NCBI RefSeq assembly: GCF_006345805.1
Contig: NC_042999.1
Location: 22,630,001 to 22,694,000 of the forward strand
Source: Octopus sinensis
Lineage: Eukaryota
Length of the DNA stretch: 64,000 nt
Reading direction: 5' to 3'
Below, piece after piece: positions 1,661-49,920 of this stretch. A program made the translations under genes and the position numbers. Position 1 is the stretch's first letter; the number at the start of each line of letters is the position of its first letter. Below the pieces are notes generated by a model, which ran no database searches, was not told the DNA's origin, and saw only the letters and a program-made list of their open reading frames with translations.

Positions 1661-1813
1661 TCTTGCCCTCCCACCCCCTCCACCAATACCGGAAGTTGTA
1701 CCCCTGTCTTACTTAACTACCCCCCACCCCCACTAGCACCTATGTAGGGTTTATCTGATCATATAGCGCAAAAAATTGTGAAATGTATGCAGGTTGTAGT
1801 CTAGTGTTTCCAT

Positions 1814-4800
1814 ATGAAATCTGCCAAATGCAAGCTTTCTTTTCAGGTACATGACACGGCTGCCCCTCATCCCAGGGTCTCAGATGCCCACACCTCCCAC
1901 ACCCTCAGAGTTGGCACACTCAATGTTGGCACATTGAAATGTAGGTCTGGAGAGATTGTAGAGCTGCTTGAACGGAGACGTGTGGATGTATGTTGTATCC
2001 AGGAAGTAAGGTGGAGAGGAGGTTCCGCTAGGCTCCTCACAGGCAAGGAACACAGGTACAAGATTTTCTGGGCAGGGAACACTGACGGGGTCAGGGGAAT
2101 GGGTATACTTCTTGCGGAGAAATGGGTAGGTAAGGTAATCGAGGTAGTCAGAGTAAGTGACAGAGTAATTAAAATTAGATTAGTCCTTCACCACAGGACA
2201 GCTACCATCATCTCGGCATATGCCCCTCAACCAGGGCTACCGGAAGGACAAAAAGACCAATTCTATGACACCCTATTGCGAACTACCTCGTTGACAAATG
2301 ACAGTGACCTTCTCTTCATGGCAGGTGATTTCAATGGACATGTCGGGGGCTTCCATGGCGTCCATGGAGGCTACGGTTTCAGCTCTTGTAATGAGGAGGG
2401 AACCAGGCTGCTGGAATTCTGCGATGCAAATGACCTTATGGTCTGCAATACCAACTTCAGGAAACTCTCCTCTCACCTAGTCACCTACCGTTCTGGCAGA
2501 CACACCAGCCAGATTGACTACATCCTTGCCAGAAAAAGGGAAAGAGGGCTGATTATAAATGCCAAAACCTTTCCAGGCGAAGAATACACTCCTCAACATA
2601 GATTAGTAGTTAGCGACTTCAGGATCAGAGCTAAATGGTTGCCCAGAAGAAGACCTGCTTGGAGGAGAAGGGTCTGGAAGCTTAAAGATCCTGCAAATGG
2701 ACAGAGATTTAGAGACATACTACTCGAAGCCTTTGACGAAATAGAAGGGGATATAGCTTCACTTAATGTGGAAGACAACTGGAGATTTCTACGGGACAAT
2801 CTGCTGACAGCCACTGACCAGATCTGTGGATGGAGCAAAGTACCATCTCAACCCAGAGTAACATGGTGGTGGAACAATGTGGTTGACAGGGCTATTAGAC
2901 AAAAGAGACAGGCTTGGAAGGACTGGAAGAACGGTGGTAGCAGGGAATTGTATCAGACAGCCAGAAGGGAAGCTAGGAGACGGGTTTATTTAGCCAGAGG
3001 GGAAGCGGATAAGAAAAAATTTGCCAATGTTCTGCGCCGTGAGGATGAAAGACTTGAGGTATTTCGTGTTGCAAGACAGTGTGTGAGAGAGAATCGTGAT
3101 GTGGTAGGAGAGAAGTGTGTTCGCATGGATGATGGTTCACTTGCGCTAAATGAGGATGCAAAGAGAGAGGTTTGGAGATGCCACTATGAAAGGTTGCTGA
3201 ATAAAGAAAATGAATGGGATAAAGAGAGTCTGCCGAATGTTGACCCAACAGAGGGACCAGCTATCCGAGTTGATAGTTCCGTGGTAGCTAAGGCAATTAG
3301 AAGCATGAAGACAGGGAAAGCCCCAGGCTCATCAGGAATTACTGCAGAGATGCTCAAAATATCTGGCAGTGTCGGCTATAACCTAGTCACCCGTATAGTC
3401 AACCAGGTGATACACGAAGGAGTCATACCCAATGACTGGTGTAGCAGCATACTAGTCAACTGCTACAAAGGTAAAGGTGATGCCCTAGATACAAATAATT
3501 ACAGAGGTATCAAGCTGTTGGATCAGGTAATGAAGGTTACGGAGAGGGTCATAGCCCAACTAATTAGAGAGTTAGTTTAGATGAGATGCAGTTTGGGTTT
3601 GTGCCAGGGAAAAGCACCACTGATGCTATATTCCTGGTAAGGCAGCTGCAGGAGAAATACCTAGCCAAAGATAAGCCCCTGTACCTGGCTTTCGTTGACA
3701 TGGAGAAAGCCTTTGATAAGGTTCCCCGATCCCTCATCTGGTGGTCAATGAGGAAACTAGGGATAGATGAATGGCTGGTGAGGGCTGTGCAAGCCATGTA
3801 CAGAGATGCCGTAAGCAAGGTTAGGGTTGGCAACATGTACACAGAAGAATTCAAAGTAGAGGTTGGGATCCACCAGGGTTCAGTACTCAGCCCCCTCCTA
3901 TTTATCATAGTCCTCCAGGCAATAACAGGAATTCAAGACAGGTTGCCCCTTGGAGCTCCTCTATGCTGACGACCTCGCTCTAATTGCTGAGTCACTATCA
4001 GAACTGGAGGAGAAGTTCCAGGTGTGGAAGGAGGGTTTAGAATCGAGGGGCCTTAGAGTCAACCTAGCTAAAACCAAAGTACTAATAAGTAGAAAGGTAG
4101 GCAATCCACAAATGTCCTCAGGAAGATGGCCCTGCTCGATCTGTAGAAAAGGTGTAGGTAGAAACTCTATAAGATGTACCCAGTGTAAGCTATGGACACA
4201 TAAGAGGTGCAGCAATGTCAAAGGTAGGCTAACTGGGAAGATAGATTTTGTATGTGGCAGATGCTCGGGAGCATTGACCTCCGAAAATCTGCAGAAAACA
4301 ACTTCCGTCACTTTCCAAGGGGAAAAAGTAGTTGATAGCTTCCGTTATCTAGGTGACCAAGTCAGTAGTGGGGGTGGGTGCACTGAGAGTGTAACTGCTA
4401 GAATAAGAATAGCCTGGGCAAAGTTTAGGGAGCTCTTACCTCTGCTGGTGACTAAAGGCCTCTCGCTCAGAGTAAAGGGTAGACTGTATGATGCATGTGT
4501 TCGAACTGCCATGCTACATGGCAGTGAAACATGGGCCGTGACTGCTGAGGACATGCGTAAGCTCATGAGGAATGAAGCCAGTATGCTCCGATGGATGTGT
4601 AATGTCAGTGTACTTACTCGACAGAGCGTTAGTTCCCTGAGAGAAATGTTGTACCTAAGAAGCATCAGTTGTTGCGTGCAAGAGAGACGATTGCGCTGGC
4701 ATGGTCATGTGGCGAGAATGGATGAAGATAGGTGTGTGAGAAAGTGCCAATCCCTAGCAGTTGAGGGAACCCGTGGAAGAGGTAGACCCAGGAAAACCTG

Positions 4801-4909
4801 GGACGAGGTGGTGAAGCACGACCTTCGACCGTTAGGTCTCACCATGGAAATGACTAGAGACCGAGACCTATGGAAGTATGCTGTGCGTGAGAAGACCCGG
4901 CAAGACTAG
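1814..4909 (+). pseudogene. RTE ORF (APE - RT with inserted PHD-type finger), broken by two frameshifts (~3575, ~3930)
   Basis: APE motifs GTLNV, IQE, SAYAP, GDFN, QIDYIL, PQHRLV; RT motifs NYRGIKLL, QFGF, FVDMEKAFD, GIHQGSVLSP, LLYADD (YADD ~3962), FRYLG; C-terminal RGRGRPRKTW. Confidence 0.92.
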
Positions 4910-5530
4910 TGAAGCCATAACCCGTGGCCCCTACCTGGGACGTAGTCAGTCCACCTGTGCATACCTTCCTGCTTGTGACACTTGTGAAGACCTGTTGAGG
5001 CAAGTGAAAGTCAAATCAAAGTCAAATCGAATCAAGTCAAACCAAATCAAAATAGATGAACATCAATGGAATTTGTATCCTTGTGGTACCAGTGCCGGTG
5101 GCACATAAGAAAACCATCCGAACGGGACCGTAGCCAGTACCGCATCGACTGGCCTCCGTGCCGTGGGCACGTAACAAACACCATCCGATCGTAGTCGTTC
5201 GCCAGCCTCGTCTGGCACCTGTGTCGGTGGCACATAAAAAACACCATCCGAGCGTGGCCGTCTGCCAGCCTCGTCTGGCATCTGTGTCGGTGGCACATAA
5301 AAAACACCATCCGAGCGTGGCCGTCTGCCAACCTCGTCTGGCACCTGTGTCGGTGGCACATAAAATCACCCACTACACTCTTGGAGTGGTTGGCGTTAGG
5401 AAGGGCATCCAGCTGTAGAAACACTGCCAGATCTGACTGGCCTGGTACAGCCTTCGGGCTTGCCAGACCCCAGTTGAACCGTCCAACCCATGCTAGCATG
5501 GAAAGCGGACGTTAAACGATGATGATGATT
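1840..5530 (+). mobile_element. RTE-clade LINE, near full-length coding region plus long 3' UTR ending in (GAT)n
   Basis: AP endonuclease, RT and C-terminal motifs across three consecutive ORFs. 3' end is CCAACCCATGCTAGCATGGAAAGCGGACGTTAAACGATGATGATGAT. Confidence 0.95.
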
Positions 5531-6944: not shown

Positions 6945-7320
6945 TCATTGTCATGGCCAATGCCTGTAACGCCTGACTGGCTCCCATGCCGGTGGCACGT
7001 AAAAAACACCATTCGAGCATGGTCGTTGCCAGTGCCGCCTGACTGGCTCTCGTACCAGTGGCACGTAAAAAACACCATTCGAGCGTGGTTGATGCCAGTG
7101 CCGCCTGACTGGTTCCTGTGCTGGTGGCACGTAAAAAGCACCCACTACACTCTCGGTGTAGTTGGCGTTAGGAAGAGCATCCAGCTGTAGAAACCTAGCC
7201 AGATTAGATTGGAGCCTGGTGCAGCCTCCTTGGTTGCCAGTCCTCAGTCAAACCGTCCAACCCATACCAGCATGGAAAGTGGACGTTAAATGATGGTGGT
7301 GGTGGTGGTGATGATGATGA
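6945..7320 (+). mobile_element. 5'-truncated copy of the RTE 3' UTR (61-bp repeats + GTTGGCGTTAGGAAG motif + (GAT)n tail)
   Basis: Same modules and 3' end as 5090-5530. Confidence 0.85.
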
Positions 7321-13165: not shown

Positions 13166-13254
13166 TGAAAACCAATGATTCCTAAATCCTATTAACAGAC
13201 ACCCTTCTTCCTCTAATAATTAAACTCTATAAGGCTCCAGCATGGCCTATATTA

Positions 13255-13990
13255 CCTATTTCTTTACTGCCCACAAGGGGCTACACACAGAGGAGACAAA
13301 GAAGGACAGACAAACGGATTAAGTCGGTTATATCGAAACCAGTGCGTAACTGGTACTTAATTTATCGACCCCGAAAGGATGAAAGGCAAAGTCGACCTCG
13401 GCGGAATTTGAACTCAGAACGTACCGGCAGACGAAATACCTATTTCTTTACTACCCACAAGGGGCTAAACACAGAGAGGATCTCGGCGGAATTTGAACTC
13501 AGAACGTACCGGCAGACGAAATACCTATTTCTTTACTACCCACAAGGGGCTGCACACAGAGGAGACAAACAAAGACAGACAAAGGGATTAAGTCGATTAT
13601 ATCGACCCTAGTGCATAACTTGTACTTAATTTAGCGACCCCGAAAGGATGAAAGGCAAAGTCGACCTCGGCGGAATTTGAACTCAGAACGTAGCAGCAGA
13701 CGAAATACCTATTTCTTTACTACTCACAAGGGGCTAAACACAGAGAGGACCTCGGCGGAATTTGAACTCAGAACGTACCGGCAGACGAAATACCTATTTC
13801 TTTACTACCCACAAGGGGCTAAACACAGAGAGGACAAACAAAGACAGACAAAGGGATTAAGTCGATTACATCGACTCCAGTGCGTAGCTGGTACTTAATT
13901 TATCGACCCCGAAAGGATGAAAGGCAAAGTCGACCTCGGCGGAATTTGAACTCAGAACGTAACGGCAGACGAAATATGGCTACGCTTGGC
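13255..13990 (-). mobile_element. SINE family B head-to-tail array
   Basis: Repeated ~185-bp and ~90-bp units joined at GAAATACC|TATTTCTTT. Confidence 0.9.
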
Positions 13991-17929: not shown

Positions 17930-19445
17930 AGTTTTGCCACAAGGGCAGTCAATTTTGGGGGAGGGGATGAGTCGATTACATCGACCCCAGTGTTTCACTG
18001 GTACTTAATTTATCGACCTCGAAAGGATGAAAGGCAAAGTCGACCTCGGCGGAATTTAAACCCAGAACTAAGACAGACGAAATACCTATTTCTTTATTGC
18101 CCACAAGGGGCTAAACACAGAGGACAAACAAGGACAGACAAACGGATTAAGTCGATTACATCGACCTCAGTGCGTAACTGGTACTTAATTTATCGACCCC
18201 GAAAGGATGAAAAGCAAAGTCGACCTCGGCGGAATTTGAACTCAGAACATAACGGCAGACGAAATACCGCTAGGCATTTCGCCTGGCGTACTAACGTTTC
18301 TGCCAGCTCCTCGCATTTATTAGTCTCAATAATCCTTTCTACTGAAGGCCTGAAATTTGGGGTAAGAAGACATCGATTCCAGCACCCAACTGGTACTTAA
18401 TTTATCGACCCAGAAGTGATGAGGCAAAGTCGACCTCGGTAGAATTTGAACTCAGAACGTAACGGTAGCCGAAATACCTATTTCTTTATTACCCACAAGG
18501 GGCTAAACACAGAGCGGACAAACAAGGACAGACATAGGTATTAAGTCGATTACATCGACCCAGTGCGTAACTGGTACTTAATTTATCGACCCCGAAAGGA
18601 TGAAAGGCAAAGTCGACCTCGGCGGAATTTGAACTCAGAACATAACGCAGATGAAATACCTATTTCTATTTCTTTATTACCCACAAGGGGCTAAACACAG
18701 AGGACAAACAAGGACAGACATAGGTATTAAGTCGATTACATCGACCCAGTGCGTAACTGGTACTTAATTTATCGACCCCGAAAGGATGAAAGGCAAAGTC
18801 GACCTCGGCGGAATTTGAACTCAGAACATAACGCAGATGAAATACCTATTTCTATTTCTTTATTACCCACAAGGGGCTAAACACAGAGGGGACAAACAAG
18901 GACAGACATAGGTATTAAGTCGTTTACATCGACCCCAGTGCGTAACTGGTATATATTTAATCGACGCCGAAAGGATGAAAGGCAAAGTCGACCTCGGCGG
19001 AATTTGAACTCACAACGTAAAGGCAGACGAAATACCGCTAAGCATTTCGTCCGGCGTGCTAACGTTTCTGCCAGCTCGCCGCCTTTTATTAGTCTTAATA
19101 ATCCTTTCTACTGAAGGCCTGAAATTTGGGGTAAGGGGACATCGAGCACCCAACTGGTACTTAATTTATCAACCCAGAAGTGATGAGGCAAAGTCGACCT
19201 CAGCGGAATTTGAACTCAGAACGTAACGCAGCCGAAATACCTATTTCTTTATTACCCACAAGGGGCTAAACATAGAGTGGACAAACAAGGGCAGACATAG
19301 GTATTAAGTCGATTACATCGACCCAGTGCGTAACTGGTACTTAATTTATCGACCCCGAAAGGATGAAAGGCAAAGTCGACCTCGGCGGAATTTGAACTCA
19401 CAACGTAGCGGTAGCCGAAATACCGCTAAGCATTTCGCCCAGCGT
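17930..19445 (-). mobile_element. SINE family B large head-to-tail array with higher-order duplication
   Basis: Multiple ~185-bp units; the block starting near 18313 recurs near 19083. Confidence 0.9.
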
Positions 19446-21517: not shown

Positions 21518-23232
21518 TATTGTTTATGTTTCTTGAGAAGATCGTCGCCTTCCGTAAAAAGTTTTAATTTTTTTTTATAAATGTTGGGTGGGGGAAGGGG
21601 ATCTTTTGAAGTTGGCGTTAAAGCGAGAGACAGAGAGAGTGCGATTGGATCAGGGAAGTTCTTTTGAAGTTGGCATGCCGTGTGTGTGTGTGTGTGTTTG
21701 ATGGGGGTGTGCGAGACGGAAGGTTGGTGTGTATGTGAAGTTCTTTTGTTAGTGTGTGTGAAGAGACAAAGAGAGTAATGTTGCTGGTATGTGTGTGTGT
21801 GTGTGTGAGAGAGAGAGATAACTGAAATTTTTTAAATTCACTTTTTGTAGTGAGTGATTGACAGAGAAAAAGAGAGAGTATGTATGAATGGCTTCAGTGA
21901 CACACACATATAAACATATATATAAATAAACATAGATGGATGTATATATATATATACACACACACATGTATGTATAGATGCGGGAGGGGCTGCAATTCTT
22001 TCCTACGGTTAATATGGTTATTTAGTAAACAAGTTTTCTCCTTTATAAGAAAACTCCAACGAATGAAAATGTTAAACATACATAGGCATAGGAGTGGCTG
22101 TGTGGTAAGTAGCTTGCTTACCAACCACATGGTTCTGGGTTCAGTCCCACTGCGTGAGACCTTGGGCAAGTGTCTTCTACTATAGCCTCGGGCACGCAAG
22201 TTGTTATGTATGTATACATAGAGTAATACACACATTACTCTCTCTGTCTCTTCACACACACACTAACAAAAGCACTTCACATACACACCACACTTTTTGT
22301 CTTGCACACCCCCATCAAACACAAACACACTCACACACAGGCACGCACATCAATTCTTTCGCTTCACGCCAACTTCAAAAGAACTTCCCTCATACAATCA
22401 TGCTCTCTCTGTCTCTTTCGCTTTCCCTCCAACTTCAAAAGATCCCCCTTCCTCAGCAAACCTATATGTAAAAACACAATTTTTTTTTTACTGAAACCGA
22501 CGATCTTCACAAATGTAAATAAATACACGTGGTTTATGACAGTCGTGTGACTAGTATCATAAGATCGCCCCATTTACCTAATAGAGGAACAATTCTCTCC
22601 ATTTTCTTGCTTACTAGTGTTGTTGTTATATATATATAATGTATTGAGTATTAAAGGAAGTAGTGAGTACTTAGTATGAAAGATTAAGAAAATGAGAGAG
22701 ACTGAAACAACGTGTTAACGATACAAGATACTTTATTCGACTGCCGTTGTTGTACAAGTTAATTGTTTTGGCGGGAAACAAAGTGAAAGTCCTTTTATCA
22801 AGGGAGACAATGGGCGACGTTGATTGTTCATGTTTGTTGTGATGATTATATAACAACTAGAACCTTGATCTTTGCCAAGTTAACCTTAAGACTCTTTGAT
22901 TCCAGGTTTTGCTTCCACACCTGGAATTTTCTAGCTCTGTTACAGAATCTGCTATAAGAGCAAGGTCGTAAGCATATAACAGTTCTCAAGGGTAGCCAGC
23001 CCTGAATTTTTCTGTTATGATCTGGAGGATAATAATGAATTGGAGGGGACTGAGAACTGAACCCTGATGAACACATACCTGTACACTAAATTCATCACTA
23101 TACTCATGGCTACTCTCCCCTTTCTGACAGATCCCCTGTACATGGCTTGTCTGACTTTCACAAACCACTCGTCTACCCTTAGCTTCCTCAGAGTCCACCA
23201 CATCATACAGTGGGGTACTCTGTCAAAGGTTT

Positions 23233-25699: not shown

Positions 25700-26125
25700 T
25701 CATCATCATCATCATCATCATCGTTTAACGTCTGCTTTCCATGCTAGCATGGGTTGGATGGTTCAACTGGGGTCTGGGAAGCCCGAAGGCTGCACCAGGA
25801 TAGTCAGATCTGGCAGTGTTTCTACAGCTGGATGCCCTTCCTAATGCCAACCACTCCGTGAGTGTAGTGGGGGATTTTTATGTGCCACGACACAGGTGCC
25901 AGACGAGGCTGGTGAACGGCCATGCTCGGATGGTGCTTTTTATGTGCCACCGACACAGGTGCCAGACGAGGCCTGCGAACGGCCACGCTCGGATAGTGTT
26001 TTTTATGTGCCACCGACACAGGTGCCAGACGAGGCTGGTGAACAGCCATGTTCGGATGGTGTTTTTTATGTGCCACCAACACAGGTGCCAGACGAGGCTG
26101 GCACGGCCACGATCGGATAGTGTTT
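25700..26125 (-). mobile_element. RTE 3'-UTR-type truncated copy with about four 61-bp repeats
   Basis: Reverse complement of 5160-5530. Confidence 0.9.
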
Positions 26126-26346
26126 GTTATGAGCCCGTACCTATGAGTATGTTTGAGCGGAAATGTGTGTTTGTGTGTTTGTGTGTTCGTCCCTCATGTA
26201 TATGCAGTTTCATTCTTACATAACTGAAATAACTTTAAGATATATTGATTTTATAAATTACAACATTACTCCTCTTATAACTTTCTCATATCTCTGTTAT
26301 ATATTATCTAATATGAATAATATAATGCATCTAATAATAATAAATC

Positions 26347-26581: not shown

Positions 26582-26742
26582 AATAATAATAATAATTGAT
26601 TCTTGTGTATGTTTATACATGCAAATATGTATGTACATTTAAGTGTAGGTATATGTATATGTATGTATATGTATAAGTATGTATATGTGTGTGTATTTAA
26701 TGTGAAGTTTTTTCTTCGTCTTTTTCCACTTTTATTAGCACT

Positions 26743-27060
26743 ATGAGTAAAAACGTTACAATCCCATCTGAGAACAAGCAAGGTGATTGCCCTGGAGTGC
26801 TGACTGGAGATCCAGCAAAGACAAAACGGGGCCTCATTGTTCTCCAAGAATGGTGGGGAATGAACCAACAAATTCAAGATGAAGCTGCTGACTTAGCTTC
26901 AAGAGGGCCATTTGTTACCCTAGTTCCTGACCTGTATCGTGGTAAGCTGGCAACTGATAATGAGGAAGCTGGTCATCTGATGAACAACCTTGACTGGGAA
27001 GGTGCCATTCAAGATATTCAGGGATGTGCCAAGTACTTACTTAATTTAGGATGTAAGAAG
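26743..27060 (+). CDS. Dienelactone hydrolase-family (carboxymethylenebutenolidase/Usf-like) hydrolase, coding exon 1 (aa 1-106)
   Basis: Acceptor TTTTATTAG ends 26738, ATG 26743. Motifs GLIVLQEWWG (E36) and LVPDLYRG. Donor AAG|GTGAGC at 27060/27061, phase 0. Confidence 0.92.
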
Positions 27061-27239
27061 GTGAGCAAAGTCTATTGTTTTTTACTGTCTCATCCAAAGA
27101 GAATGACCATTGTCCATTCCCTACAGAATCTCTGTTGTTTAACCCTAGGTCAATCCATTATGAACAGGCATATGATGTATACCTATCAATTATTATACCA
27201 AGGACTACATTGTCTAATGGGTCCTTCCTTTTAAGACGT

Positions 27240-28218: not shown

Positions 28219-28521
28219 CCACATTTTCAATATTCTGTAAGAATGTGTCTGACTTTGGTGAAATATTACATTGCTTGGAAATTGGTGAGGGTTGGCAACA
28301 GGAAGATGTCTAAAGAACATCTGCTTTAATAAACTTCATCTGATCCATGCAAACATAGAGGTGTGGACATGAAAGTGATGATAACACCGGCTGTTATGAC
28401 TTACTGCATATTTTTTTGTAACTGCTTCTCCTTACCTGACCATTTTAACCTTATTTGTTTTTTTGCAGAATTCTAATGAAAATTTCAGCATTAATTAATT
28501 CAAATTTTATTTGATTGGCAG

Positions 28522-28887
28522 ATTGGTGTCACTGGGTTTTGCATGGGTGGAGCCCTGGCCTTTGCTTCTGCTGTCCGTGTACCAGAAATCAACGCTTCTG
28601 CACCCTTTTATGGAATTCCTGGTGAAGCTATTGCAGATGTAACGAAGATCAAGATTCCTCTGCAGTGCCATTTTGGTAAAAACGACAACGTGGTTGGTTT
28701 CTCATCTCCAGTCGAACAGGAGGCTGTCCGCAAGAAGCTAGATAATGCTAAAGTAAAACATGAATTCCATGTTTATGATGCTGGGCATGCGTTTACCAAT
28801 ACTACATCGCCAGGATTTCACAAGGAATCATGTGACCTTGCCCTTGGTCGTTTAATTAAATTTATGAATGAGAACTTACAAGCATGA
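28522..28887 (+). CDS. Dienelactone hydrolase-family hydrolase, coding exon 2 (aa 107-227)
   Basis: GGCAG|ATT GGT GTC ACT GGG TTT TGC ATG GGT GGA gives IGVTGFCMGG (nucleophile Cys113), HFGKND (acid), YDAGHAF (His). In frame with exon 1; TGA ends 28887. Confidence 0.92.
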   Translation: MGVTGFCMGGALAFASAVRVPEINASAPFYGIPGEAIADVTKIKIPLQCHFGKNDNVVGFSSPVEQEAVRKKLDNAKVKHEFHVYDAGHAFTNTTSPGFHKESCDLALGRLIKFMNENLQA

Positions 28888-30962: not shown

Positions 30963-31848
30963 GTTAGTTAGTTAGTTAGTTAATCTTTTGGCTCAAAAAG
31001 CAAAAAGCAAGGCCATGTAGGGGGACATGGAGTTAAGTACAGGGTGGTGTTCCTGTAAAGAATTCAGGCCATTTGTGGTCAAGGGAGACTTTGAACCGAG
31101 CGGTCGTCGGCATCTTCACTATCTCGTCCGGCAGCTTATTCCACGGAACCGCAACCCGGACGGAGAAAGCCCCTCTCCTTCGATTGAAATGAAATCGTCG
31201 CAGATAGAGCTTTTCGGAGTGACCCCGCAGCCGACGTTCTGGAGCAGGAGTGAAGAACAGCTCTTTCGAGAGGTTACACTTTCTGCTTATGATGTTGTGA
31301 GCAAGAATGAGATCACCACGGAGTCGTCGTTTTTCTAGAGAATAAAGGTCGAGTGTCTTCAGCCTTTCTTCATAAGACAAATGCTTGAGACCAAGAACCA
31401 TGCGGGTAGCCAGCTTCTGGACTCTTTCGAGATGTTGTATGTCTTTGAGGAGATAAGAAGAGGCTTGAATCCGTACTCCGATAGGAATATGACTGCTGTG
31501 AGCATTCCGAATGACCGTCGAATCAAGAACAGAACTCCGCGTGCTTTGTTGGCAGCATGGACGCACTGGGCCGAAGGCGAAAAGGAAGAATCCACCAAGA
31601 TACCCAGGTCCTTTACCTGGTCCGTCCTCTCCAGCAGCAGACAACCCGGCTCGAAATCAAGTTGAGTTGCAGGAGAAGAGCCAACAGGCTGATGATAGCA
31701 CTTTGACACGTTCAGACACAGGTCCCATTCGTTAGACCATCTCCAAACTTGGTGGAGGCATCGACGAAGATCCTCTATATCACCGCGAGGAGCGACCAGG
31801 CTGACATCATCGGCAAATAGAAGGGTGTGTTGCATAAGGTCGTCGGGC
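30963..31848 (-). mobile_element. CR1-clade LINE 3' fragment nested in a SINE A (30826-30962, 31850-32075)
   Basis: LLFADD, VKDLGI, LERVQKLATR, LEKRRLRGDLI, WNKLP motifs; (TAAC)n tail. Confidence 0.92.
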
Positions 31849-32799
31849 AAGTGTGTGTGGGTGTGTGTGTGTATATATGTTTGTGACTGTGTTTGTCCCC
31901 CCAATATCGCTTGACAACCGATGGTGGTGTGTTTATGTCCCCGTAACTTAGCGGTTCGGCAAAAGTGACTGATAGAATAAATACTAGACTTACAAAGAAT
32001 AAATCCTAGGGTCGATTTGCTCGACTAAAGGCAGTGCTCCATTATGGCTGCAATCAAATGACTGAAACAAGTGTAAAGAGAAAAAATATATATATAATGT
32101 GTATATGTTTGTATGAGTATATATTTCCCTTGTCTTTACATGTGTTCACTGGTTGTGAATAATGACCTCACAGACTCATTTACTTTCAGTCCTTGGCAAA
32201 AGCATGTCCAAGCTTGATGTTTCACAATATTTGTAAGCAAAACTAAAAAAAAAGCGAATTTGTAGTAAACATATCAGGGTTGTTGTTCAATAGACTGGGA
32301 CATTATTACTTTGATTGTAAACAGGCAAGGGATGGCATTCAGCAGTAGAAGCAGTCTGAATGCACTCTTGTTTGACCCATGCAAGCACGAAAAAGTAGAC
32401 ACAAAAGTAGACACAAAATCGAAAGGGTTAATCCACTTCCTGCAAATTTCAGATTTTTTGCTTATATATATATGTAACGATAAAGTTTGTTGTTATAACA
32501 GCATATTGTAGGATGAGAAAGCTGATTTAAGGGAATTTGGCTGCCATTTCTAGCAGGTCAATTCAGCTGCCGGTGTGCGGCGAGTTTCCAGAAATGAAAC
32601 ATTATAAAATACTTCAAAATGCTTATGTAACATTGTATTATTTATTCTTTTACTCTTTTACTTGTTTCAGTCATTTGACTGAGGCCATGCTGGAGCACCG
32701 CCTTTAGTCGAGCAAATCGACCGCAGGATTTATATACATGTATATACATATATATTATGTATATAATATACATCCAGATGTATATTATGTATATAATAT

Positions 32800-35020: not shown

Positions 35021-35559
35021 ATGGATAACAACTAGTAATATAAGAAATACAAGTTCACTAAACTTATAATTTAAGCACATTCTCATATATATTTCGAAAA
35101 TCTCTTTTTGAAAATCTGTGTTATGTTGTCTATATGTTGAAAGACACACAGCACACGCACACTTGAACAGCCAAGAAAATAACTATATGTAATATATAGA
35201 TGATATGACGGACAGACAGATAGGGATAAGCTTCACTTGATGTGACAAGGCCTCAAAATCCTCAGCGCCATCATAGGAAAACTGTAGAAAGAGTTACCTC
35301 TCTTGAGGTGCTAACAGTGTATGAGCGCCCATGTTTTTCTCACCAGATAGCGCGTTCTTGACATTTTCCGCCGATTGCCCATGTTACGTAAGCCAGTTGG
35401 CCCTATTAAGTTGCTGGGACGAATCTTCGTTTCCCTCTAATATTTTTTTGTGGTTTTTACCACAGTAAGTCCATAAGAGATGTTATCTCAGGAGAAATAT
35501 TACAGTACCTGACCTTTCAACAGTGTACATACATTTAGTTTAATATAAAGATGGCTCTC

Positions 35560-35768
35560 TCTCTTTTACTCTTTTACTTGTTTCAGTCATTTGACTGCGG
35601 CCATGCTGGAGCACCGCCTTTAGTTGAGCAAATCGACCCCGGGACTTATTCTTTGTAATCCCAGTACTTATTCTATCGGTCTCTTTTGCCGAACCGCTAA
35701 GTGACGGGGACGTAAACACACCAGCATCGGTTGTCAAGCAATGCTAGGGGACAAACATAGACACACAG

Positions 35769-35825
<57 letters not shown>

Positions 35826-35990
35826 TACGACGGGCTTCTTTCAGTTTCTGCCTACCAAATCCACTCACAAGGCATTGGTTGGCCCGGGGCTATAGCAGAA
35901 GACACTTGCCCAAGATGCCACGCAGTGGGATTGAACCCGGAACCATGTGGTTGGTTAGCAAGCTACTTACCACACAGCCACTCCTGCGCC
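35560..35990 (-). mobile_element. SINE family A, full length
   Basis: Complete head, (TA)n linker and tail. Confidence 0.9.
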
Positions 35991-36230
35991 TATAGCCACT
36001 TGTAATTACATGCTGCTTCAATTGCGCATATCAGATATAAGTTTGCGCGTGTGTATGTATACATACATGCACATACAGGCACACAAACTCACACACAGAG
36101 GCGTAAGTATAGCTATGTTAACAAGCTCGCTTTAAGTTTCAGGTTCGATCCTTCTGTAGGGCATCACTTCTTAAATATACTTGCTGATGTAGCGTGGCTG
36201 TTTTCAGCCATTTTGAAATATGACTATAGT

Positions 36231-37700
36231 GGTCTCTATGTAGTTCGCGCCACTGGTTGACATGTGACACGAGGGTCTCTACGTAGTTCGCGCCACTGGT
36301 TGACATGTGACATGAGGGTCTCTACGTAGTTCGCGCCACTGGTTGACATGTGACACGAGGGTCTCTACGTAGTTCGCGCCACTGGTTGACATGTGACACG
36401 AGGGTCTCTACGTAGTTCGCGCCACTGGTTGACATGTGACACGAGGGTCTCTACGTAGTTCGCGCCACTGGTTGACATGTGACACGAGGGTCTCTACGTA
36501 GTTCGCGCCACTGGTTGACATGTGACACGAGGGTCTCTACGTAGTTCGCGCCACTGGTTGACATGTGACACGAGGGTCTCTACGTAGTTCGCGCCACTGG
36601 TTGACATGTGACACGAGGGTCTCTACGTAGTTCGCGCCACTGGTTGACATGTGACACGAGGGTCTCTACGTAGTTCGCGCCACTGGTTGACATGTGACAC
36701 GAGGGTCTCTACGTAGTTCGCGCCACTGGTTGACATGTGACACGAGGGTCTCTACGTAGTTCGCGCCACTGGTGACATGTGACACGAGGGTCTCTACGTA
36801 GTCCGCGCCACTGGTTGACATGTGACACGAGGGTCTCTACGTAGTCGCGCCACTGGTTGACATGTGACACGTGGGTCTCTACGTAGTTCGCGCCACTGGT
36901 TGACATGTGACACGAGGGTCTCTACGTAGTTCGCGCCACTGGTTGACATGTGACACGAGGGTCTCTACGTAGTTCGCGCCACTGGTTGACATGTGACACG
37001 AGGGTCTCTACGTAGTTCGCGCCACTGGTTGACATGTGACACGAGGGTCTCTACGTAGTTCGCGCCACTGGTTGACATGTAACACGAGGGTCTCTACGTA
37101 GTCCGCGCCACTGGTTGACATGTGACACGAGGGTCTCTACGTAGTTCGCGCCACTGGTTGACATGTGACACGAGGGTCTCTACGTAGTCCGCGCCACTGG
37201 TTGACATGTGACACGAGGGTCTCTACGTAGTTCGCGCCACTGGTTGACATGTGACACGAGGGTCTCTACGTAGTTCGCGCCACTGGTTGACATGTGACAC
37301 GAGGGTCTCTACGTAGTTCGCGCCACTGGTTGACATGTGACACGAGGGTCTCTACGTAGTTCGCGCCACTGGTTGACATGTGACACGAGGGTCTCTACGT
37401 AGTTCGCGCCACTGGTTGACATGTGCCACGAGGGTCTCTACGTAGTCCGCGCCACTGGTTGACATGTTACACGAGGGTCTCTGCGTAGTTCGCGCCACTG
37501 GTTGACATGTGACACGAGGGTCTCTACGTAGTTCGCGCCACTGGTTGACATGTGACACGAGGGTCTCTACGTAGTTCGCGCCACTGGTTGACATGTGACA
37601 CGAGGGTCTCTACGTTGTCCGCGCCACTGGTTGACATGTGACACGAGGGTCTCTACGTAGTCCGCGCCACTGGTTGACACGTGACGCGAATTGTCTCGAC
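36231..37700 (+). repeat. Tandem array of ~34 copies of a 43-bp unit
   Basis: Unit TAGTTCGCGCCACTGGTTGACATGTGACACGAGGGTCTCTACG, period 43 (36241 to 36284), very homogeneous, no spacers. Confidence 0.97.
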
Positions 37701-37725
37701 TTATTTCGCGCCACAGTCTCGAAAC

Positions 37726-37825
37726 AACCAATCACAACCTTTGTTTAAGATTCCATTTCTGAAGTTCGGTGAGTCACTCAAACAGTATATAAAGGAGGGT
37801 TCACAGACACTTTTCGTCTTTAGTT
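37726..37825 (+). promoter_or_regulatory. Pol II core promoter: CCAAT box, AP-1 site, TATA box
   Basis: AACCAATCAC (CCAAT 37728-32), TGAGTCA (37770-76), TATATAAA (37786-93), in canonical order and spacing. Confidence 0.65.
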
Positions 37826-37875
37826 CTAGTTCTTCTAAGAACTAACTTAGGCCACCTGCAGCTCAACTTAGAGAT

Positions 37876-38037
37876 ATGCGATTGTCTCTGCTACTACCTG
37901 TTGCTACGCTAATGTATACAATCACTGAAGGCTTGCTATATTCGCCGTTCGCCTCTACCATCATGTATCGACCTCGAGTAGATTCCTACACCTTCGCCAT
38001 AGGAACTGTGAACCAAATTCCATTGTTAATTCTATAG
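37876..38037 (+). CDS. Candidate 53-aa micropeptide with signal-peptide-like N-terminus
   Basis: MRLSLLLPVATLMYTITEGLLYSPFASTIMYRPRVDSYTFAIGTVNQIPLLIL*; first ATG after the TATA box; AATAAA at 38129-34. No homology recognised. Confidence 0.3.
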   Translation: MRLSLLLPVATLMYTITEGLLYSPFASTIMYRPRVDSYTFAIGTVNQIPLLIL

Positions 38038-38323
38038 TCAGTACCTTTTATGCCTCACGAACACACAGACACAATAACATGCTAACGCTTACGAACTCCT
38101 AACATTGACGCGATCGTAAAATATGTAAAATAAATAATATTTATCTCCCAACAGAAGATTCGTTGTCAATTCACTTATGTTCTATTGTTATTGTATGTAT
38201 TTATGGCTTGTAATAATTCGTTAAGAGTAGAACCATGTGCGATCGTATTTCCTATACGATACGACCACATGTGATCCTATTTCTTATACTGATAAAGAGA
38301 AAAGTTAAGTTAAATTAAGTTAA

Positions 38324-38545
38324 TTTTTTGGCTCAAAAAGCAAAAAGCAAGGCCATGTAGGGGGACATGGAGTTATGTACAGGGTGGTGTTCATGCAAAG
38401 AGTTCAGGCCATTTGTGGTCAAGGGAGACTTTGAACCGAGCGGTCGTCGGCATCTTCACTATCTCGTCCGGCAGCTTATTCCACGGATCCGCAATCCGGA
38501 CGGAAAAAAGCCCCTCTCCTTCGATTGAGATGAGATTGTCAATTC
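38324..38545 (-). mobile_element. Short 3' end of the same CR1 as 30963-31848
   Basis: Near-identical to 30985-31190. Confidence 0.9.
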
Positions 38546-39084
38546 AAGATAAAACACCAGCGTTTAGAAGCGGGTTCCAGTACTGCAACTTCTGTTTCAC
38601 AGATAAATTTCATATCCGCTACCTACTTCAAACTCGAACAAAAAAGAAGGATAAGCTTATTTCGACCTGACGACATATACACTAATCCCTTCTCGTGACC
38701 TTTAAAACAGATCCCTGACATATGTTGTAAAGCTATTGAAGTCAGAGATGACAGAATTATGTGAAAGTATTGATTGCTATTTAACAGTTGAAATATTATC
38801 AATCATTCCTTTTCAACACGTGGAGCTGTGCAGTCCAGCAAAACGTCGATTGACAGACACACTGATTCAAATTCATAACGCTTCTCACACTTTTTCTCAG
38901 TCTCTACCTCTCTTTCTCTCTGTGTCTCTGTCTCTCTTTCCTCTTCTGTCTCTCTCTCTCTCACACACACACTCACTCTCTATCTCTATCTCTGTTCTTG
39001 TCTTCTATCTCTCACATATAATTATATACATATATGCATGCACACACACTTGCTCATTCTACATACACATATACATACATAAAT

Positions 39085-47782: not shown

Positions 47783-49321
47783 GTATTTGTATGTATGTAC
47801 ATGTGTACTTGCTGTCGATTCATCGACAACTGGTGGAAATCTCGACATAGTATTGCCGGTTTATCTGTTCTGGTTGTAGTCGCCGGTTCAGTGTGTACAC
47901 GTCATCGATATATACGCCGTGATACTTTTAAACCACTGAATAAAATGCATTATTACTAAGTTTTATTTAAATATTTTATTCACATAGTAAATATGTCGTA
48001 TTTTATTAACAACGAAGAATAATTCCAAAGCTAGAAAAAAAATTCCATCATACGATCGGGGAAATTTTTTATAAACCTCGAAGAATGAATAATCAAGAAA
48101 GAAAGTTATAATCGAACACTATATCACCAGTGCTGATATTCCACATCATAAAAAGAGATATAAAGATAGATTAACGAGAATTCAACGTATCATCGGTGAT
48201 ATGAAAATGGGGAAAAAGATACTGGATTATTTGACATCGCTCGTAATTCTTTTTTTATAGAATAATTTTATGTTTTTCTTTTGTTGTACTTCCTACAATT
48301 CAAAATAGCATAATTCGTTTTACTGATTATATTTTTCTTCGAAATTTTATATTTAAAAGTAACGTTACTTTTTTTTTCTTCATGTATATATTTGAGTAAA
48401 TTTTGAATTAATAATTTTTTTTTTGTTATCTTTGAATGTTTATTTCGTTGCTAATGAAATATGATATATTTTCTGTGCAAATAAAAGCTTTGTATGTCGT
48501 TCAGTGATAAAGTAAAGTATAGCGACGAATTTGTTGACGATGTAATGACTCACACCACATTAATACTAGACCTTGCGACGAAATCACTGGTGATATATTT
48601 GATATGATGTAATAGCTCTCAATGAAATTATCGGACATCTTCTATACCTACCTATCCACTCTGACCAACTGTGGATCAAACAGTGTACTTCCATGGTCGA
48701 ATTAGCCATTGAAACCTTCAGACATAGACACATGTATGAACACACACACACACACACACACACAGCAGAGAGAGAGAGAGAGAGAGAGAAGAGAGGAGAG
48801 AGAGAGAGGTGGGAGAGGGATGAGCAAGCACATCTATCGACGACGTACATCGGTGAAAGACGCAAACAGCGGCGAAAACCCCATTTTTATTCGAACGAAG
48901 TCCGCCGAGTTAGCTACATCCCTATCATTCTCGCTGGTAGAAATACAGATCCTTAGACACTTCTCTGTCTGGAGTTTTCCACCCGCTGAGTCTTCTTAGT
49001 GATACAATAGTACATATTTCGTTTCTTCCCCTCGATTCTATGAAGATTTCATATATGTATGTGTGTGTGTGTGTGTGTGCATGGGGATTTATGATAGTCA
49101 TTTTGCCATTAAACTCAACTATCTTTCAGACCTTCTCAATATTTTTCTCTTCTCTATACTGACAAGCGATTCAAGCGAAAGAAAATTCGCATGAATTATG
49201 AATAAGTTCAATTGCTCTGATGAGTGAAAAGTCTAACGTTTATGTCTCTAACCATTCAACACCTTCAGTTTGCTCTACTCTCTGTTGTAGTACGAAATGT
49301 CAGACGTTTCACTTCTCATAT

Positions 49322-49920
49322 ATTTCTTTATTGCCCACAAGAGGCTAAACATAGAGAGGACAAACAAGGACAGACAAAAGGATTAAGTCGATTACATCGA
49401 CCCCAGTGCGAAACTAGTACTTTATTTATCGACCCCGAAAGGATGAAAGGCAAAGTCGACCTCGGCAGAATTTGAACTCAGAACGTAACGACAGACGAAA
49501 TACCTATTTCTTTACTACCCTCAAGGGGCTAAACATAGAGTGGACAAACAGGGACAGACAAAGGGATTAAGTCGATTACATCGACCCCAGTGCGTTACTG
49601 GTACTTAAATTATCGACCCCAAAAGGATGAAAGACAAAGTCGACCTCGGCAGAATTTGAACTCAGAACGTAACGACAGACGAAATACCTATTTCTTTACT
49701 ACCCACAAGAGGCTAAACATAGAGTGGACAAACAGGGACAGACAAAGGGATTAAGTCGATTACATCGACCCCAGTGCGTTACTGGTACTTAAATTATCGA
49801 CCCCAAAAGGATGAAAGACAAAGTCGACCTCGGCAGAATTTGAACTCAGAACGTAACGGCGGACGAAATACTGCTAAGCGTTTCGCCTGGCGTGCTAACG
49901 TTTCTGCCAGTTCGCCGCCT
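49322..49920 (-). mobile_element. SINE family B trimer
   Basis: Three ~183-bp units; the last two are nearly identical. Confidence 0.9.

What the first reader, a model, noticed from the sequence alone, without database searches (positions are those of the whole stretch)
36231..38295. 43-bp CpG-rich array fused to a complete promoter and poly(A) signal: amplified-enhancer cassette
Seen: ~34 near-identical units, each with 4 CpG, TTCGCGCC (E2F-like), CATGTG (E-box) and CACGAG (N-box-like). The last unit degrades directly into CCAAT, TGAGTCA, TATATAAA, then AATAAA (38129) and a GT-rich tract. Possible termini AGTGGTC (36228) and GACCACA (38269) lack a clear TSD. Inference: an LTR whose U3 enhancer repeat expanded massively, or a small gene under a VNTR rheostat, possibly cell-cycle responsive and methylation-sensitive.
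Basis: partly seen in the sequence, partly recalled or inferred. Interest (0 to 1): 0.75.

Follow-up and report, generated by a model that had tools for sequence, protein, structure and literature searches.

The report
Octopus solo-LTR-like insertion, 43-bp array
The 43-bp repeat array and the promoter-like stretch beside it form a single 2.1-kb piece of mobile DNA, most likely a lone retrotransposon long terminal repeat with a hugely expanded enhancer repeat; it landed in one octopus lineage and is missing from the same spot in Octopus bimaculoides, which makes it a known kind of thing rather than a new gene.

Summary
There are 34.5 head-to-tail copies of a 43-bp CpG-rich unit at 36231-37714, 97% matching. 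They run into one CCAAT, one AP-1-like site, one TATA box and one AATAAA, all on the + strand.

The window is octopus DNA. In the collinear locus of Octopus bimaculoides (L001) the site is empty. Window 36189-38288 (2100 bp) is an insertion flanked by a 5-bp target-site duplication, CTGAT (36184-36188 and 38289-38293). A separate 5'-truncated minus-strand LINE fragment (38305-38532) sits just to its right.

The window holds no second copy and no gag, pol or integrase genes. The 53-aa ORF has no credible homologue.

Best reading (about 0.55): a lineage-specific solo LTR. U3 would be a 42-bp leader, the expanded array and the core promoter. R would run to the poly(A) site near 38152, and U5 to 38288. 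It works like the primate ERV9/LTR12 U3 repeats (5-17 units of about 41 nt).

LTR membership is not proven. The 3' end reads TA rather than CA, and no other copies could be searched for. The "small gene under a VNTR rheostat" reading is not supported. Interest is modest: a new member of a known kind.

The parts
36184..36188 (.). Left copy of the target-site duplication (CTGAT); also the last bases homologous to O. bimaculoides
   Evidence: homology to L001 runs up to this pentamer. CTGAT occurs only twice in 36100-38600, at the two junctions.
36189..38288 (+). Whole inserted element (2100 bp), read as a solo LTR
   Evidence: absent from the collinear O. bimaculoides locus L001 (empty site near L001 21777-21790); no other copy in the window or in L001.
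36189..36230 (+). 42-bp non-repeat leader at the 5' end, with a 6-bp-stem hairpin (about 36195-36210)
   Evidence: no significant similarity to the repeat unit (76 of 300 shuffles score as well). DNA fold -6.3 kcal/mol, z = -3.4.
36231..37714 (+). Array of 34.5 units of 43 bp, CpG-rich; putative expanded U3 enhancer repeat
37715..37816 (+). Core-promoter-like segment: CCAAT 37728, AP-1-like 37770, TATA 37786-37793
   Evidence: Motifs only; transcription has not been shown.
37817..38153 (+). Putative transcribed (R-like) segment, from the Inr-like sites at 37820 and 37826 to the CA after AATAAA (38129-38134). It contains the orphan 53-aa ORF at 37876-38037.
   Evidence: ORF without homologues.
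38154..38288 (+). Putative U5-like end: GT/T-rich tract at about 38175-38207 and a long imperfect hairpin at 38234-38271
   Evidence: fold -9.8 kcal/mol, z = -4.9, matched by 0 of 200 shuffles..
38289..38293 (.). Right copy of the target-site duplication (CTGAT). Together with the AA that follows it reproduces the 7-mer of the empty site.
   Evidence: CTGATAA occurs 7 times in 64 kb on the + strand, so about 0.2% chance of one falling in a given 20-bp span.
38305..38532 (-). Neighbour, not part of the element: a 5'-truncated LINE fragment whose short-repeat tail (38305-38323) faces the element. It is also absent in O. bimaculoides.
   Evidence: 95% identical to 30978-31199, the 3' end of the RT-bearing LINE remnant at 31036-32024; the O. 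bimaculoides flank resumes at 38533, with a few bases of microhomology.

Best explanation
Window 36189-38288 is a lineage-specific insertion of a mobile element, most likely a solo long terminal repeat of an LTR retrotransposon in an octopus genome.

Shown:
- It is one 2100-bp block, absent at the orthologous site of O. bimaculoides and bracketed by a 5-bp target-site duplication.
- It carries promoter-like and poly(A)-like signals in one orientation.

Inferred layout:
- U3 (36189 to about 37816): a 42-bp leader, 34.5 copies of a 43-bp CpG-rich module, then CCAAT, an AP-1-like site and a TATA box.
- R (about 37817-38153): from a start near 37817-37826 to cleavage at the CA about 18 nt after AATAAA.
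- U5 (38154-38288).

Inferred history of the array: it grew by unequal exchange or replication slippage. The ten identical units 3-12 and the other identical blocks are young. The degenerate units 33-35 next to the promoter are the oldest.

Inferred function: as in other LTRs with U3 tandem repeats, each unit would add binding sites (an E2F-like site, an ACGT-core palindrome and a CATGTG box), so unit number would scale enhancer strength. As a solo LTR it could at most make a non-coding polyadenylated RNA of about 335 nt, or act on neighbours. The nearest detected gene is the usf/dienelactone-hydrolase gene, which ends 7.3 kb upstream.
For: - Organism and orthology: the usf/DLH exons at 26701-27231 and 28495-28884 are closest to O. 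bimaculoides 'protein usf', 91%. Its locus L001 is collinear with the window at 75-94% DNA identity.
- Empty site: L001 passes from the left flank to the right flank with only 10 bp in between, where the window has 36189-38532.
- Target-site duplication: CTGAT lies at 36184-36188 and 38289-38293. The right copy plus AA equals the 7-mer of the empty site. A 4-6-bp duplication without terminal inverted repeats is what integrase-type LTR elements leave (established knowledge).
- Signals: one each of CCAAT, AP-1-like, TATA and AATAAA, all on the + strand and in the U3-R-U5 order, with a CA and a GT-rich tract after AATAAA.
- Youth or lack of methylation: CpG is not depleted (observed/expected 1.2 against 0.79), and the two duplication copies are identical.
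- Precedent: ERV9/LTR12 LTRs carry 5-17 tandem repeats of about 41 nt in U3 that act as enhancers, and most copies are solo LTRs (PMC11853044). Tandem repeats inside LTR elements commonly expand (PMC7004042).
- No coding role.
Against: - The termini are not the canonical TG...CA. A 5' TG exists only if the duplication is read as 4 bp (CTGA), and the 3' end reads TA. There is no convincing terminal inverted repeat.
- There is no second copy, no partner LTR, and no gag, pol or integrase ORF in 64 kb. There is no copy in 26 kb of O. bimaculoides or 45 kb of Argonauta. That the family is multi-copy is therefore assumed, not shown.
- An R region of about 335 nt with the poly(A) signal at its far end is long for an LTR.
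- Transcription, factor binding and the true array length were not observable. The array length rests on a single assembly.
- A LINE fragment lies within about 16 bp of the right end. This needs either coincidence or a more complex history.
Confidence: 0.55

Rival explanations
1. A mobile element of another or an undescribed class, for example a non-autonomous element moved by an integrase or transposase that leaves 5-bp duplications, or a short-duplication retroelement on the minus strand whose 3' part holds the array and a terminal stem-loop. On this reading the promoter-like motifs are incidental or belong to captured DNA.
For: The insertion and the 5-bp duplication are shown, but the ends are not TG...CA. 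Both ends carry significant subterminal hairpins (z = -3.4 and -4.9), which LTRs do not require. No LTR-type genes lie nearby.
Against: - There are no terminal inverted repeats, so the usual DNA transposons with 5-bp duplications do not fit.
- There is no poly(A) or short-repeat tail at either end.
- The Helitron criteria fail: no TC...CTRR ends, no A|T target, and a duplication is present.
- There is no hammerhead or other Rfam match, even at E up to 1.
- The one-strand promoter and poly(A) layout is left unexplained.
Confidence: 0.2
2. A single composite LINE-mediated event. The 5'-truncated minus-strand LINE and the 2.1-kb block arrived together, by 3' transduction or template switching, as passenger DNA copied from another locus where the array and promoter are native.
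For: - The LINE tail abuts the block within about 16 bp, and both are missing in O. bimaculoides.
- The LINE's truncated end joins the flank with microhomology, and about 10 bp of target are replaced. Both are typical of LINE insertions (established knowledge).
Against: - The 7-mer CTGATAA of the empty site reappears between the block and the LINE tail. The block therefore has its own duplication and its own right flank. A single event would put the duplication outside the LINE.
- The far end of the block (36189) has no tail of the LINE's kind.
Confidence: 0.1
3. A small host transcription unit: a promoter, a short RNA or a 53-aa peptide, and a poly(A) signal, preceded by a VNTR that tunes its output. 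It would have been placed here by DNA-level duplication rather than by transposition.
For: The TATA/Inr spacing and the AATAAA, CA and GT-rich order are well formed. CpG is not depleted, as in unmethylated promoters. The ORF begins with a hydrophobic, signal-peptide-like stretch.
Against: - The ORF has no homologue in any database searched, and its single hit is spurious.
- The unit is absent from the orthologous locus of a close relative.
- It is bracketed by a target-site duplication, which marks transposition and not gene birth in place.
Confidence: 0.08
4. The array length is an assembly artefact. The element is real, but the unit count was inflated or collapsed during assembly.
For: Twenty-one identical units, including ten in a row, are the kind of sequence that assemblers misjudge. 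No reads are available here.
Against: Irregularly placed variants (six units with the same T-to-C change, two 42-nt units and several singletons) look like real sequence, not a copied block.
Confidence: 0.07

Closest known systems
Solo LTRs of primate ERV9 (LTR12 family) with U3 tandem enhancer repeats
   Same: - Tandem repeats of about 40 nt (41 nt there, 43 nt here) lie directly upstream of the LTR core promoter.
- Unit number varies.
- Most copies are solo LTRs.
- Each repeat carries transcription-factor motifs.
- The U3-R-U5 layout is the same (PMC11853044).
   Different: - LTR12 has 5-17 units; this has 34.5.
- There is no sequence relation, and the host is a mollusc, not a primate.
- Here the CCAAT box lies outside the repeats, and the unit is CpG-rich with an E2F-like motif.
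- The termini here are not TG...CA.
- Enhancer activity is shown for LTR12 and only inferred here.
Tandem repeats inside LTR retrotransposons that expand into satellite-like arrays (for example plant Ogre/Retand elements)
   Same: A short repeat carried by an LTR element is amplified into a long homogeneous array (PMC7004042 and PMC12628747).
   Different: Those arrays mostly lie in the internal 3' untranslated region, not in U3, and can grow to satellite scale. This one is a 1.5-kb array inside one terminal repeat.
Monomer arrays in the 5' UTR of mouse L1 (from my own knowledge)
   Same: CpG-rich promoter modules repeated head to tail at the 5' end of a retroelement, with copy number affecting promoter strength.
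   Different: L1 monomers are about 200 bp and are followed by the LINE ORFs on the same strand. Here no ORF1 or ORF2 follows, and the neighbouring LINE fragment is on the opposite strand and is a separate insertion.
SVA-type composite retrotransposons (VNTR plus an LTR-derived part plus poly(A); from my own knowledge)
   Same: A GC-rich VNTR with units of 35-50 bp joined to a promoter or LTR-like segment with AATAAA.
   Different: SVA ends in a poly(A) tail and has long, variable duplications made by L1. This element has no tail and a 5-bp duplication.

Membership tests
LTR retrotransposon (solo LTR) | Insertion flanked by a 4-6-bp target-site duplication | tested here: met
   CTGAT lies at 36184-36188 and 38289-38293. 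The single copy in O. bimaculoides (L001 near 21781) is followed by the same AA.
LTR retrotransposon (solo LTR) | Termini 5'-TG...CA-3' with a short terminal inverted repeat | tested here: inconclusive
   A 5' TG exists only if the duplication is read as 4 bp. The 3' end reads TA, one transition from CA. There is no extended inverted repeat. Non-canonical termini are known in some families (from my own knowledge), so this neither proves nor excludes membership.
LTR retrotransposon (solo LTR) | Promoter (U3), transcribed repeat (R) with a poly(A) signal, and U5, all in one orientation | tested here: met
   Met at the motif level only. CCAAT 37728, AP-1-like 37770, TATA 37786, Inr-like 37820/37826, AATAAA 38129, CA 38152 and a GT-rich tract are all on the + strand, with none on the minus strand.
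LTR retrotransposon (solo LTR) | Other genomic copies, some paired around an internal region with a primer-binding site, polypurine tract and gag/pol | not testable with these tools
   No octopus genome can be searched by DNA here. There is no copy in the window, in L001, or in L002/L003, and no LTR-type genes in the window.
LTR12/ERV9-like U3 enhancer repeats (works like, not homologous) | Tandem units of about 40 nt directly upstream of the LTR core promoter | tested here: met
   There are 34.5 units of 43 bp, ending 72 bp before the TATA box. The comparison comes from PMC11853044.
LTR12/ERV9-like U3 enhancer repeats (works like, not homologous) | Demonstrated transcription-factor binding and enhancer activity of the repeats | not testable with these tools
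   Only motif content is available.
Helitron / Helentron carrying tandem repeats | 5'-TC...CTRR-3' ends, a 3' hairpin, insertion at A|T or T|T without a target-site duplication | tested here: not met
   A 3' hairpin is present. The ends do not fit on either strand, and a 5-bp duplication is present.
LINE-dependent composite retroelement (SVA-like) or LINE 3' transduction | A 3' poly(A) or LINE-type tail at the end of the insertion, with the duplication flanking the whole unit | tested here: not met
   There is no tail at 36189 or 38288. The duplication separates the block from the LINE fragment.
Penelope-like element or retrozyme terminal repeats | Hammerhead ribozyme in the repeat | tested here: not met
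   No Rfam match at the gathering threshold or at E up to 1 within 36100-38600.
Protein-coding small gene | An ORF with relatives or a known domain | tested here: not met
   The 53-aa ORF gave nothing. The one hit is a bacterial repeat protein matched over six repeats, which I judge spurious.

The most novel reading that the evidence does not exclude
The block is a young, mobile, self-contained Pol II mini-unit of octopuses. Its U3 repeat has been driven to an extreme (34 units, a CpG-island-like 1.5 kb), and it now acts as a species-specific, copy-number-tunable enhancer or non-coding RNA source next to the usf/DLH gene. That would be a cephalopod counterpart of primate LTR12, arisen independently.
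Probability: 0.12. Interest if true: 0.55.

Novelty: new member of a known kind. Interest (0 to 1): 0.3.

Why it matters
If the reading holds, this is a clean, dated example of a transposable element delivering a ready-made promoter and a very large, unmethylated-looking enhancer repeat to a new place in a cephalopod genome. It is present in one octopus and absent at the same site in another. TE-borne regulatory repeats are well studied in primates and plants and hardly at all in cephalopods, whose genomes are dominated by repeats. A census of this family would show whether U3 repeat number varies between copies and individuals. As a single locus it is ordinary genome furniture, and nothing points to a new mechanism.

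Tried and rejected
Homology to O. bimaculoides stops at 36188 and the duplicated pentamer is at 38289.
- Degenerate units left of the array: not significant. 76 of 300 shuffles scored as well.
- Other copies of the leader, unit or unique segment in the window, L001, L002 or L003: none.
- Exact look-ups of the 53-aa ORF, the 37-aa perfect-unit ORF and a LINE ORF: not on record.
- Protein searches with the 53-aa ORF and an 80-aa array ORF: nothing.
- HMMER against 1.84 billion representatives: one hit, a bacterial surface protein with six repeats, rejected as repeat-inflated.
- Pfam: nothing above cut-off.
- Rfam at gathering and at E up to 1: nothing. tRNA scan: nothing.
- Bacterial promoter and terminator scan: at chance level and irrelevant for a eukaryote.
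- Full-text search for pieces of the unit: no paper. Octopus satellite and minisatellite literature: nothing relevant.
- Argonauta hians loci as an outgroup: only exons and dispersed repeats align, so the site cannot be polarised that way.
- Single-strand folding of the unit: not better than shuffles.
- O. bimaculoides isoform X2 was not on record. The longest isoform worked.

Full report
**1. The observation**

Tandem Repeats Finder reports a single array at 36231-37714: period 43, 34.5 copies, 97% matches. Cut unit by unit, 21 of 35 units are identical to the natural unit at 36317-36359, and units 3-12 form an unbroken identical run. Six units share one T-to-C change and two units are 42 nt long. 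The three units nearest the promoter are increasingly degenerate, and the last is a 23-nt half unit. The unit occurs nowhere else in the window.

The array has 139 CpG, with observed/expected 1.19. The unique part of the element has 1.15 and the rest of the window 0.79.

Immediately downstream there is exactly one CCAAT (37728), one TGAGTCA (37770), one TATATAAA (37786-37793) and one AATAAA (38129-38134). All are on the + strand and none on the minus strand. Inr-like sites lie at 37820 and 37826, a CA at 38152-38153, and a GT/T-rich tract at about 38175-38207.

The full motif order occurs once in the window against 0.01 per shuffle. That test was framed after seeing the data. The simpler CCAAT/TATA/AATAAA order is common: 4 observed, 1.6 expected.

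**2. What genome this is**

The window is AT-rich and packed with microsatellites, tRNA-like SINE copies and LINE remnants. It is not human.

Two ORF pieces at 26701-27231 and 28495-28884 (+) match the two halves of the dienelactone hydrolase family. Searching the first piece alone found O. bimaculoides 'protein usf' as the nearest protein at 91%, followed by Argonauta hians. I searched exon by exon and did not look up a joined product.

The longest O. bimaculoides isoform led to its chromosomal locus, L001 (CM046603.1). L001 is collinear with the window over its whole 26 kb at 75-94% DNA identity. The window therefore comes from an octopus close to, but not identical with, O. bimaculoides. 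A diverged duplicate of that region is also possible, and the argument below holds either way.

**3. The decisive comparison**

L001 21107-21551 matches window 35111-35556, and L001 21553-21785 matches 36000-36188. L001 21796-22362 then matches 38533-39084.

At base level the O. bimaculoides sequence runs left flank, CTGAT, ten bases, right flank. The window runs:
- left flank and CTGAT (36184-36188)
- 2100 bp (36189-38288)
- CTGAT and AA (38289-38295)
- nine A/G-rich bases
- the short-repeat tail and body of a minus-strand LINE fragment (38305-38532)
- the right flank, from 38533

CTGAT occurs only at these two places within 36100-38600. The 7-mer CTGATAA, which equals the empty site, occurs 7 times in 64 kb, so the chance of finding it in a given 20-bp span is about 0.2%.

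The array and the promoter-like segment are therefore one inserted block with its own 5-bp target-site duplication.

The LINE fragment is 95% identical to the 3' end of the RT-bearing LINE remnant at 31036-32024. It joins the right flank through a few bases of microhomology and replaces about ten bases of target. I read it as a second, independent insertion.

A deletion in O. bimaculoides would need breakpoints that coincide with the duplicated pentamer on one side and the truncated LINE end on the other, so insertion in the window's lineage is the simpler reading. Argonauta is too distant to serve as an outgroup, because only exons and dispersed repeats align.

**4. What kind of element**

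- There are no terminal inverted repeats.
- There is no poly(A) or short-repeat tail at either end.
- Helitron ends do not fit on either strand, and Helitrons leave no duplication.
- There is no hammerhead or other RNA family.
- No LINE ORFs lie on the same strand.
- No ORF of 80 aa or more anywhere in the window matches integrase, gag or protease. Only LINE-type RT and endonuclease and the DLH gene are found.

Among the major classes, a 4-6-bp duplication without inverted repeats, together with a promoter and a poly(A) signal in one orientation within a unit of LTR size, fits a solo LTR. Without the array the unit is about 615 bp.

Weak points:
- The ends are TG...TA at best, and then only if the duplication is read as 4 bp.
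- The R-like part is long, about 335 nt.
- I could not search any octopus genome by DNA, so copy number, partner LTRs and an internal region remain untested.
- Both ends carry significant small hairpins (z = -3.4 and -4.9) that this reading does not explain.

**5. The small-gene alternative**

The only ORF in the putative transcript is 53 aa (37876-38037). It is not on record, has no relative sharing words among 5.8 billion clusters and has no Pfam match.

It has a single HMMER hit among 1.84 billion representatives. That hit is a 1107-aa bacterial surface protein matched over six internal repeats, which I judge spurious.

ORFs read from the array on the minus strand likewise found nothing. 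With the target-site duplication and the empty orthologous site added, a native small gene is unlikely.

**6. How it most likely works (inferred)**

The block is a U3-R-U5 unit whose U3 repeat was amplified by unequal exchange or slippage. The identical central and 5' units would be the newest, and the degenerate promoter-proximal units the oldest.

Each unit offers an E2F-like site, an ACGT-core palindrome and a CATGTG box (counts). More units would therefore mean more binding sites upstream of one core promoter.

The closest described parallel is the primate ERV9/LTR12 LTR. Its U3 holds 5-17 repeats of about 41 nt that bind NF-Y and partners, and its copies are mostly solo LTRs acting as promoters or enhancers (PMC11853044). 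Expansion of tandem repeats carried by LTR elements is well documented in plants (PMC7004042).

The resemblance is functional, not by descent.

**7. Verdict**

- The boundaries are corrected to 36189-38288, with a 5-bp duplication.
- The LTR reading is favoured (about 0.55) but membership is unproven.
- The small-gene reading is not supported.
- This is a new member of a known kind and of modest interest.

- I ran no pattern scan of the viral or metagenome contig collections with the repeat unit.
- I made no joined-exon look-up.
- Possible slip: searches used the 43-nt unit, or parts of it, as printed by Tandem Repeats Finder. It is identical to the natural unit at 36317-36359. I stopped using it once I noticed, and nothing was deleted.

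Noticed in passing
window 26701-27231 and 28495-28884 (+): Two coding pieces of a usf/dienelactone-hydrolase (carboxymethylenebutenolidase-like) gene, 91% identical in exon 1 to the O. bimaculoides protein. It is the only host gene detected in the window, and it ends 7.3 kb upstream of the element.
   Followed up: partly
window 38305-38532 (-) and 30963-32024 (-): Two copies of one LINE family's 3' end, 95% identical, each ending in short TAAC/TTAAC-type repeats. The first is a 5'-truncated fragment absent in O. bimaculoides. It joins the flank by microhomology and replaces about 10 bp of target.
   Followed up: partly
window 35557-35999: A tRNA-like SINE copy, of a family with many copies in the window, is absent at the orthologous O. 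bimaculoides position (L001 21551-21553). I saw no clear target-site duplication.
   Followed up: partly
window 1805-4906 (+): A LINE with an endonuclease ORF and a separate ORF that carries the end of the RT domain followed by a PHD-finger-like motif (Pfam E = 6e-5, just under the cut-off).
   Followed up: no
window 13253-13976, 18388-19036, 49321-49871: SINE-like units arranged head to tail in short arrays of period 184-269 (2.7-3.5 copies, 92-95% matches). SINE-derived tandem arrays recur in this region.
   Followed up: no
window 5084-5365, 6952-7142, 25875-26135: A 63-66-bp minisatellite with a shared unit occurs at three places in both orientations. Neighbouring stretches also match the Argonauta loci L002 and L003, so it probably belongs to an old dispersed element.
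   Followed up: no
L001 about 21640-21690 versus window about 36100: A (CT)n microsatellite is about 44 bp longer in O. bimaculoides than in the window.
   Followed up: no
window 36195-36210 and 38234-38271: Significant small hairpins lie just inside both ends of the inserted element (z = -3.4 and -4.9). The solo-LTR reading does not explain them.
   Followed up: partly
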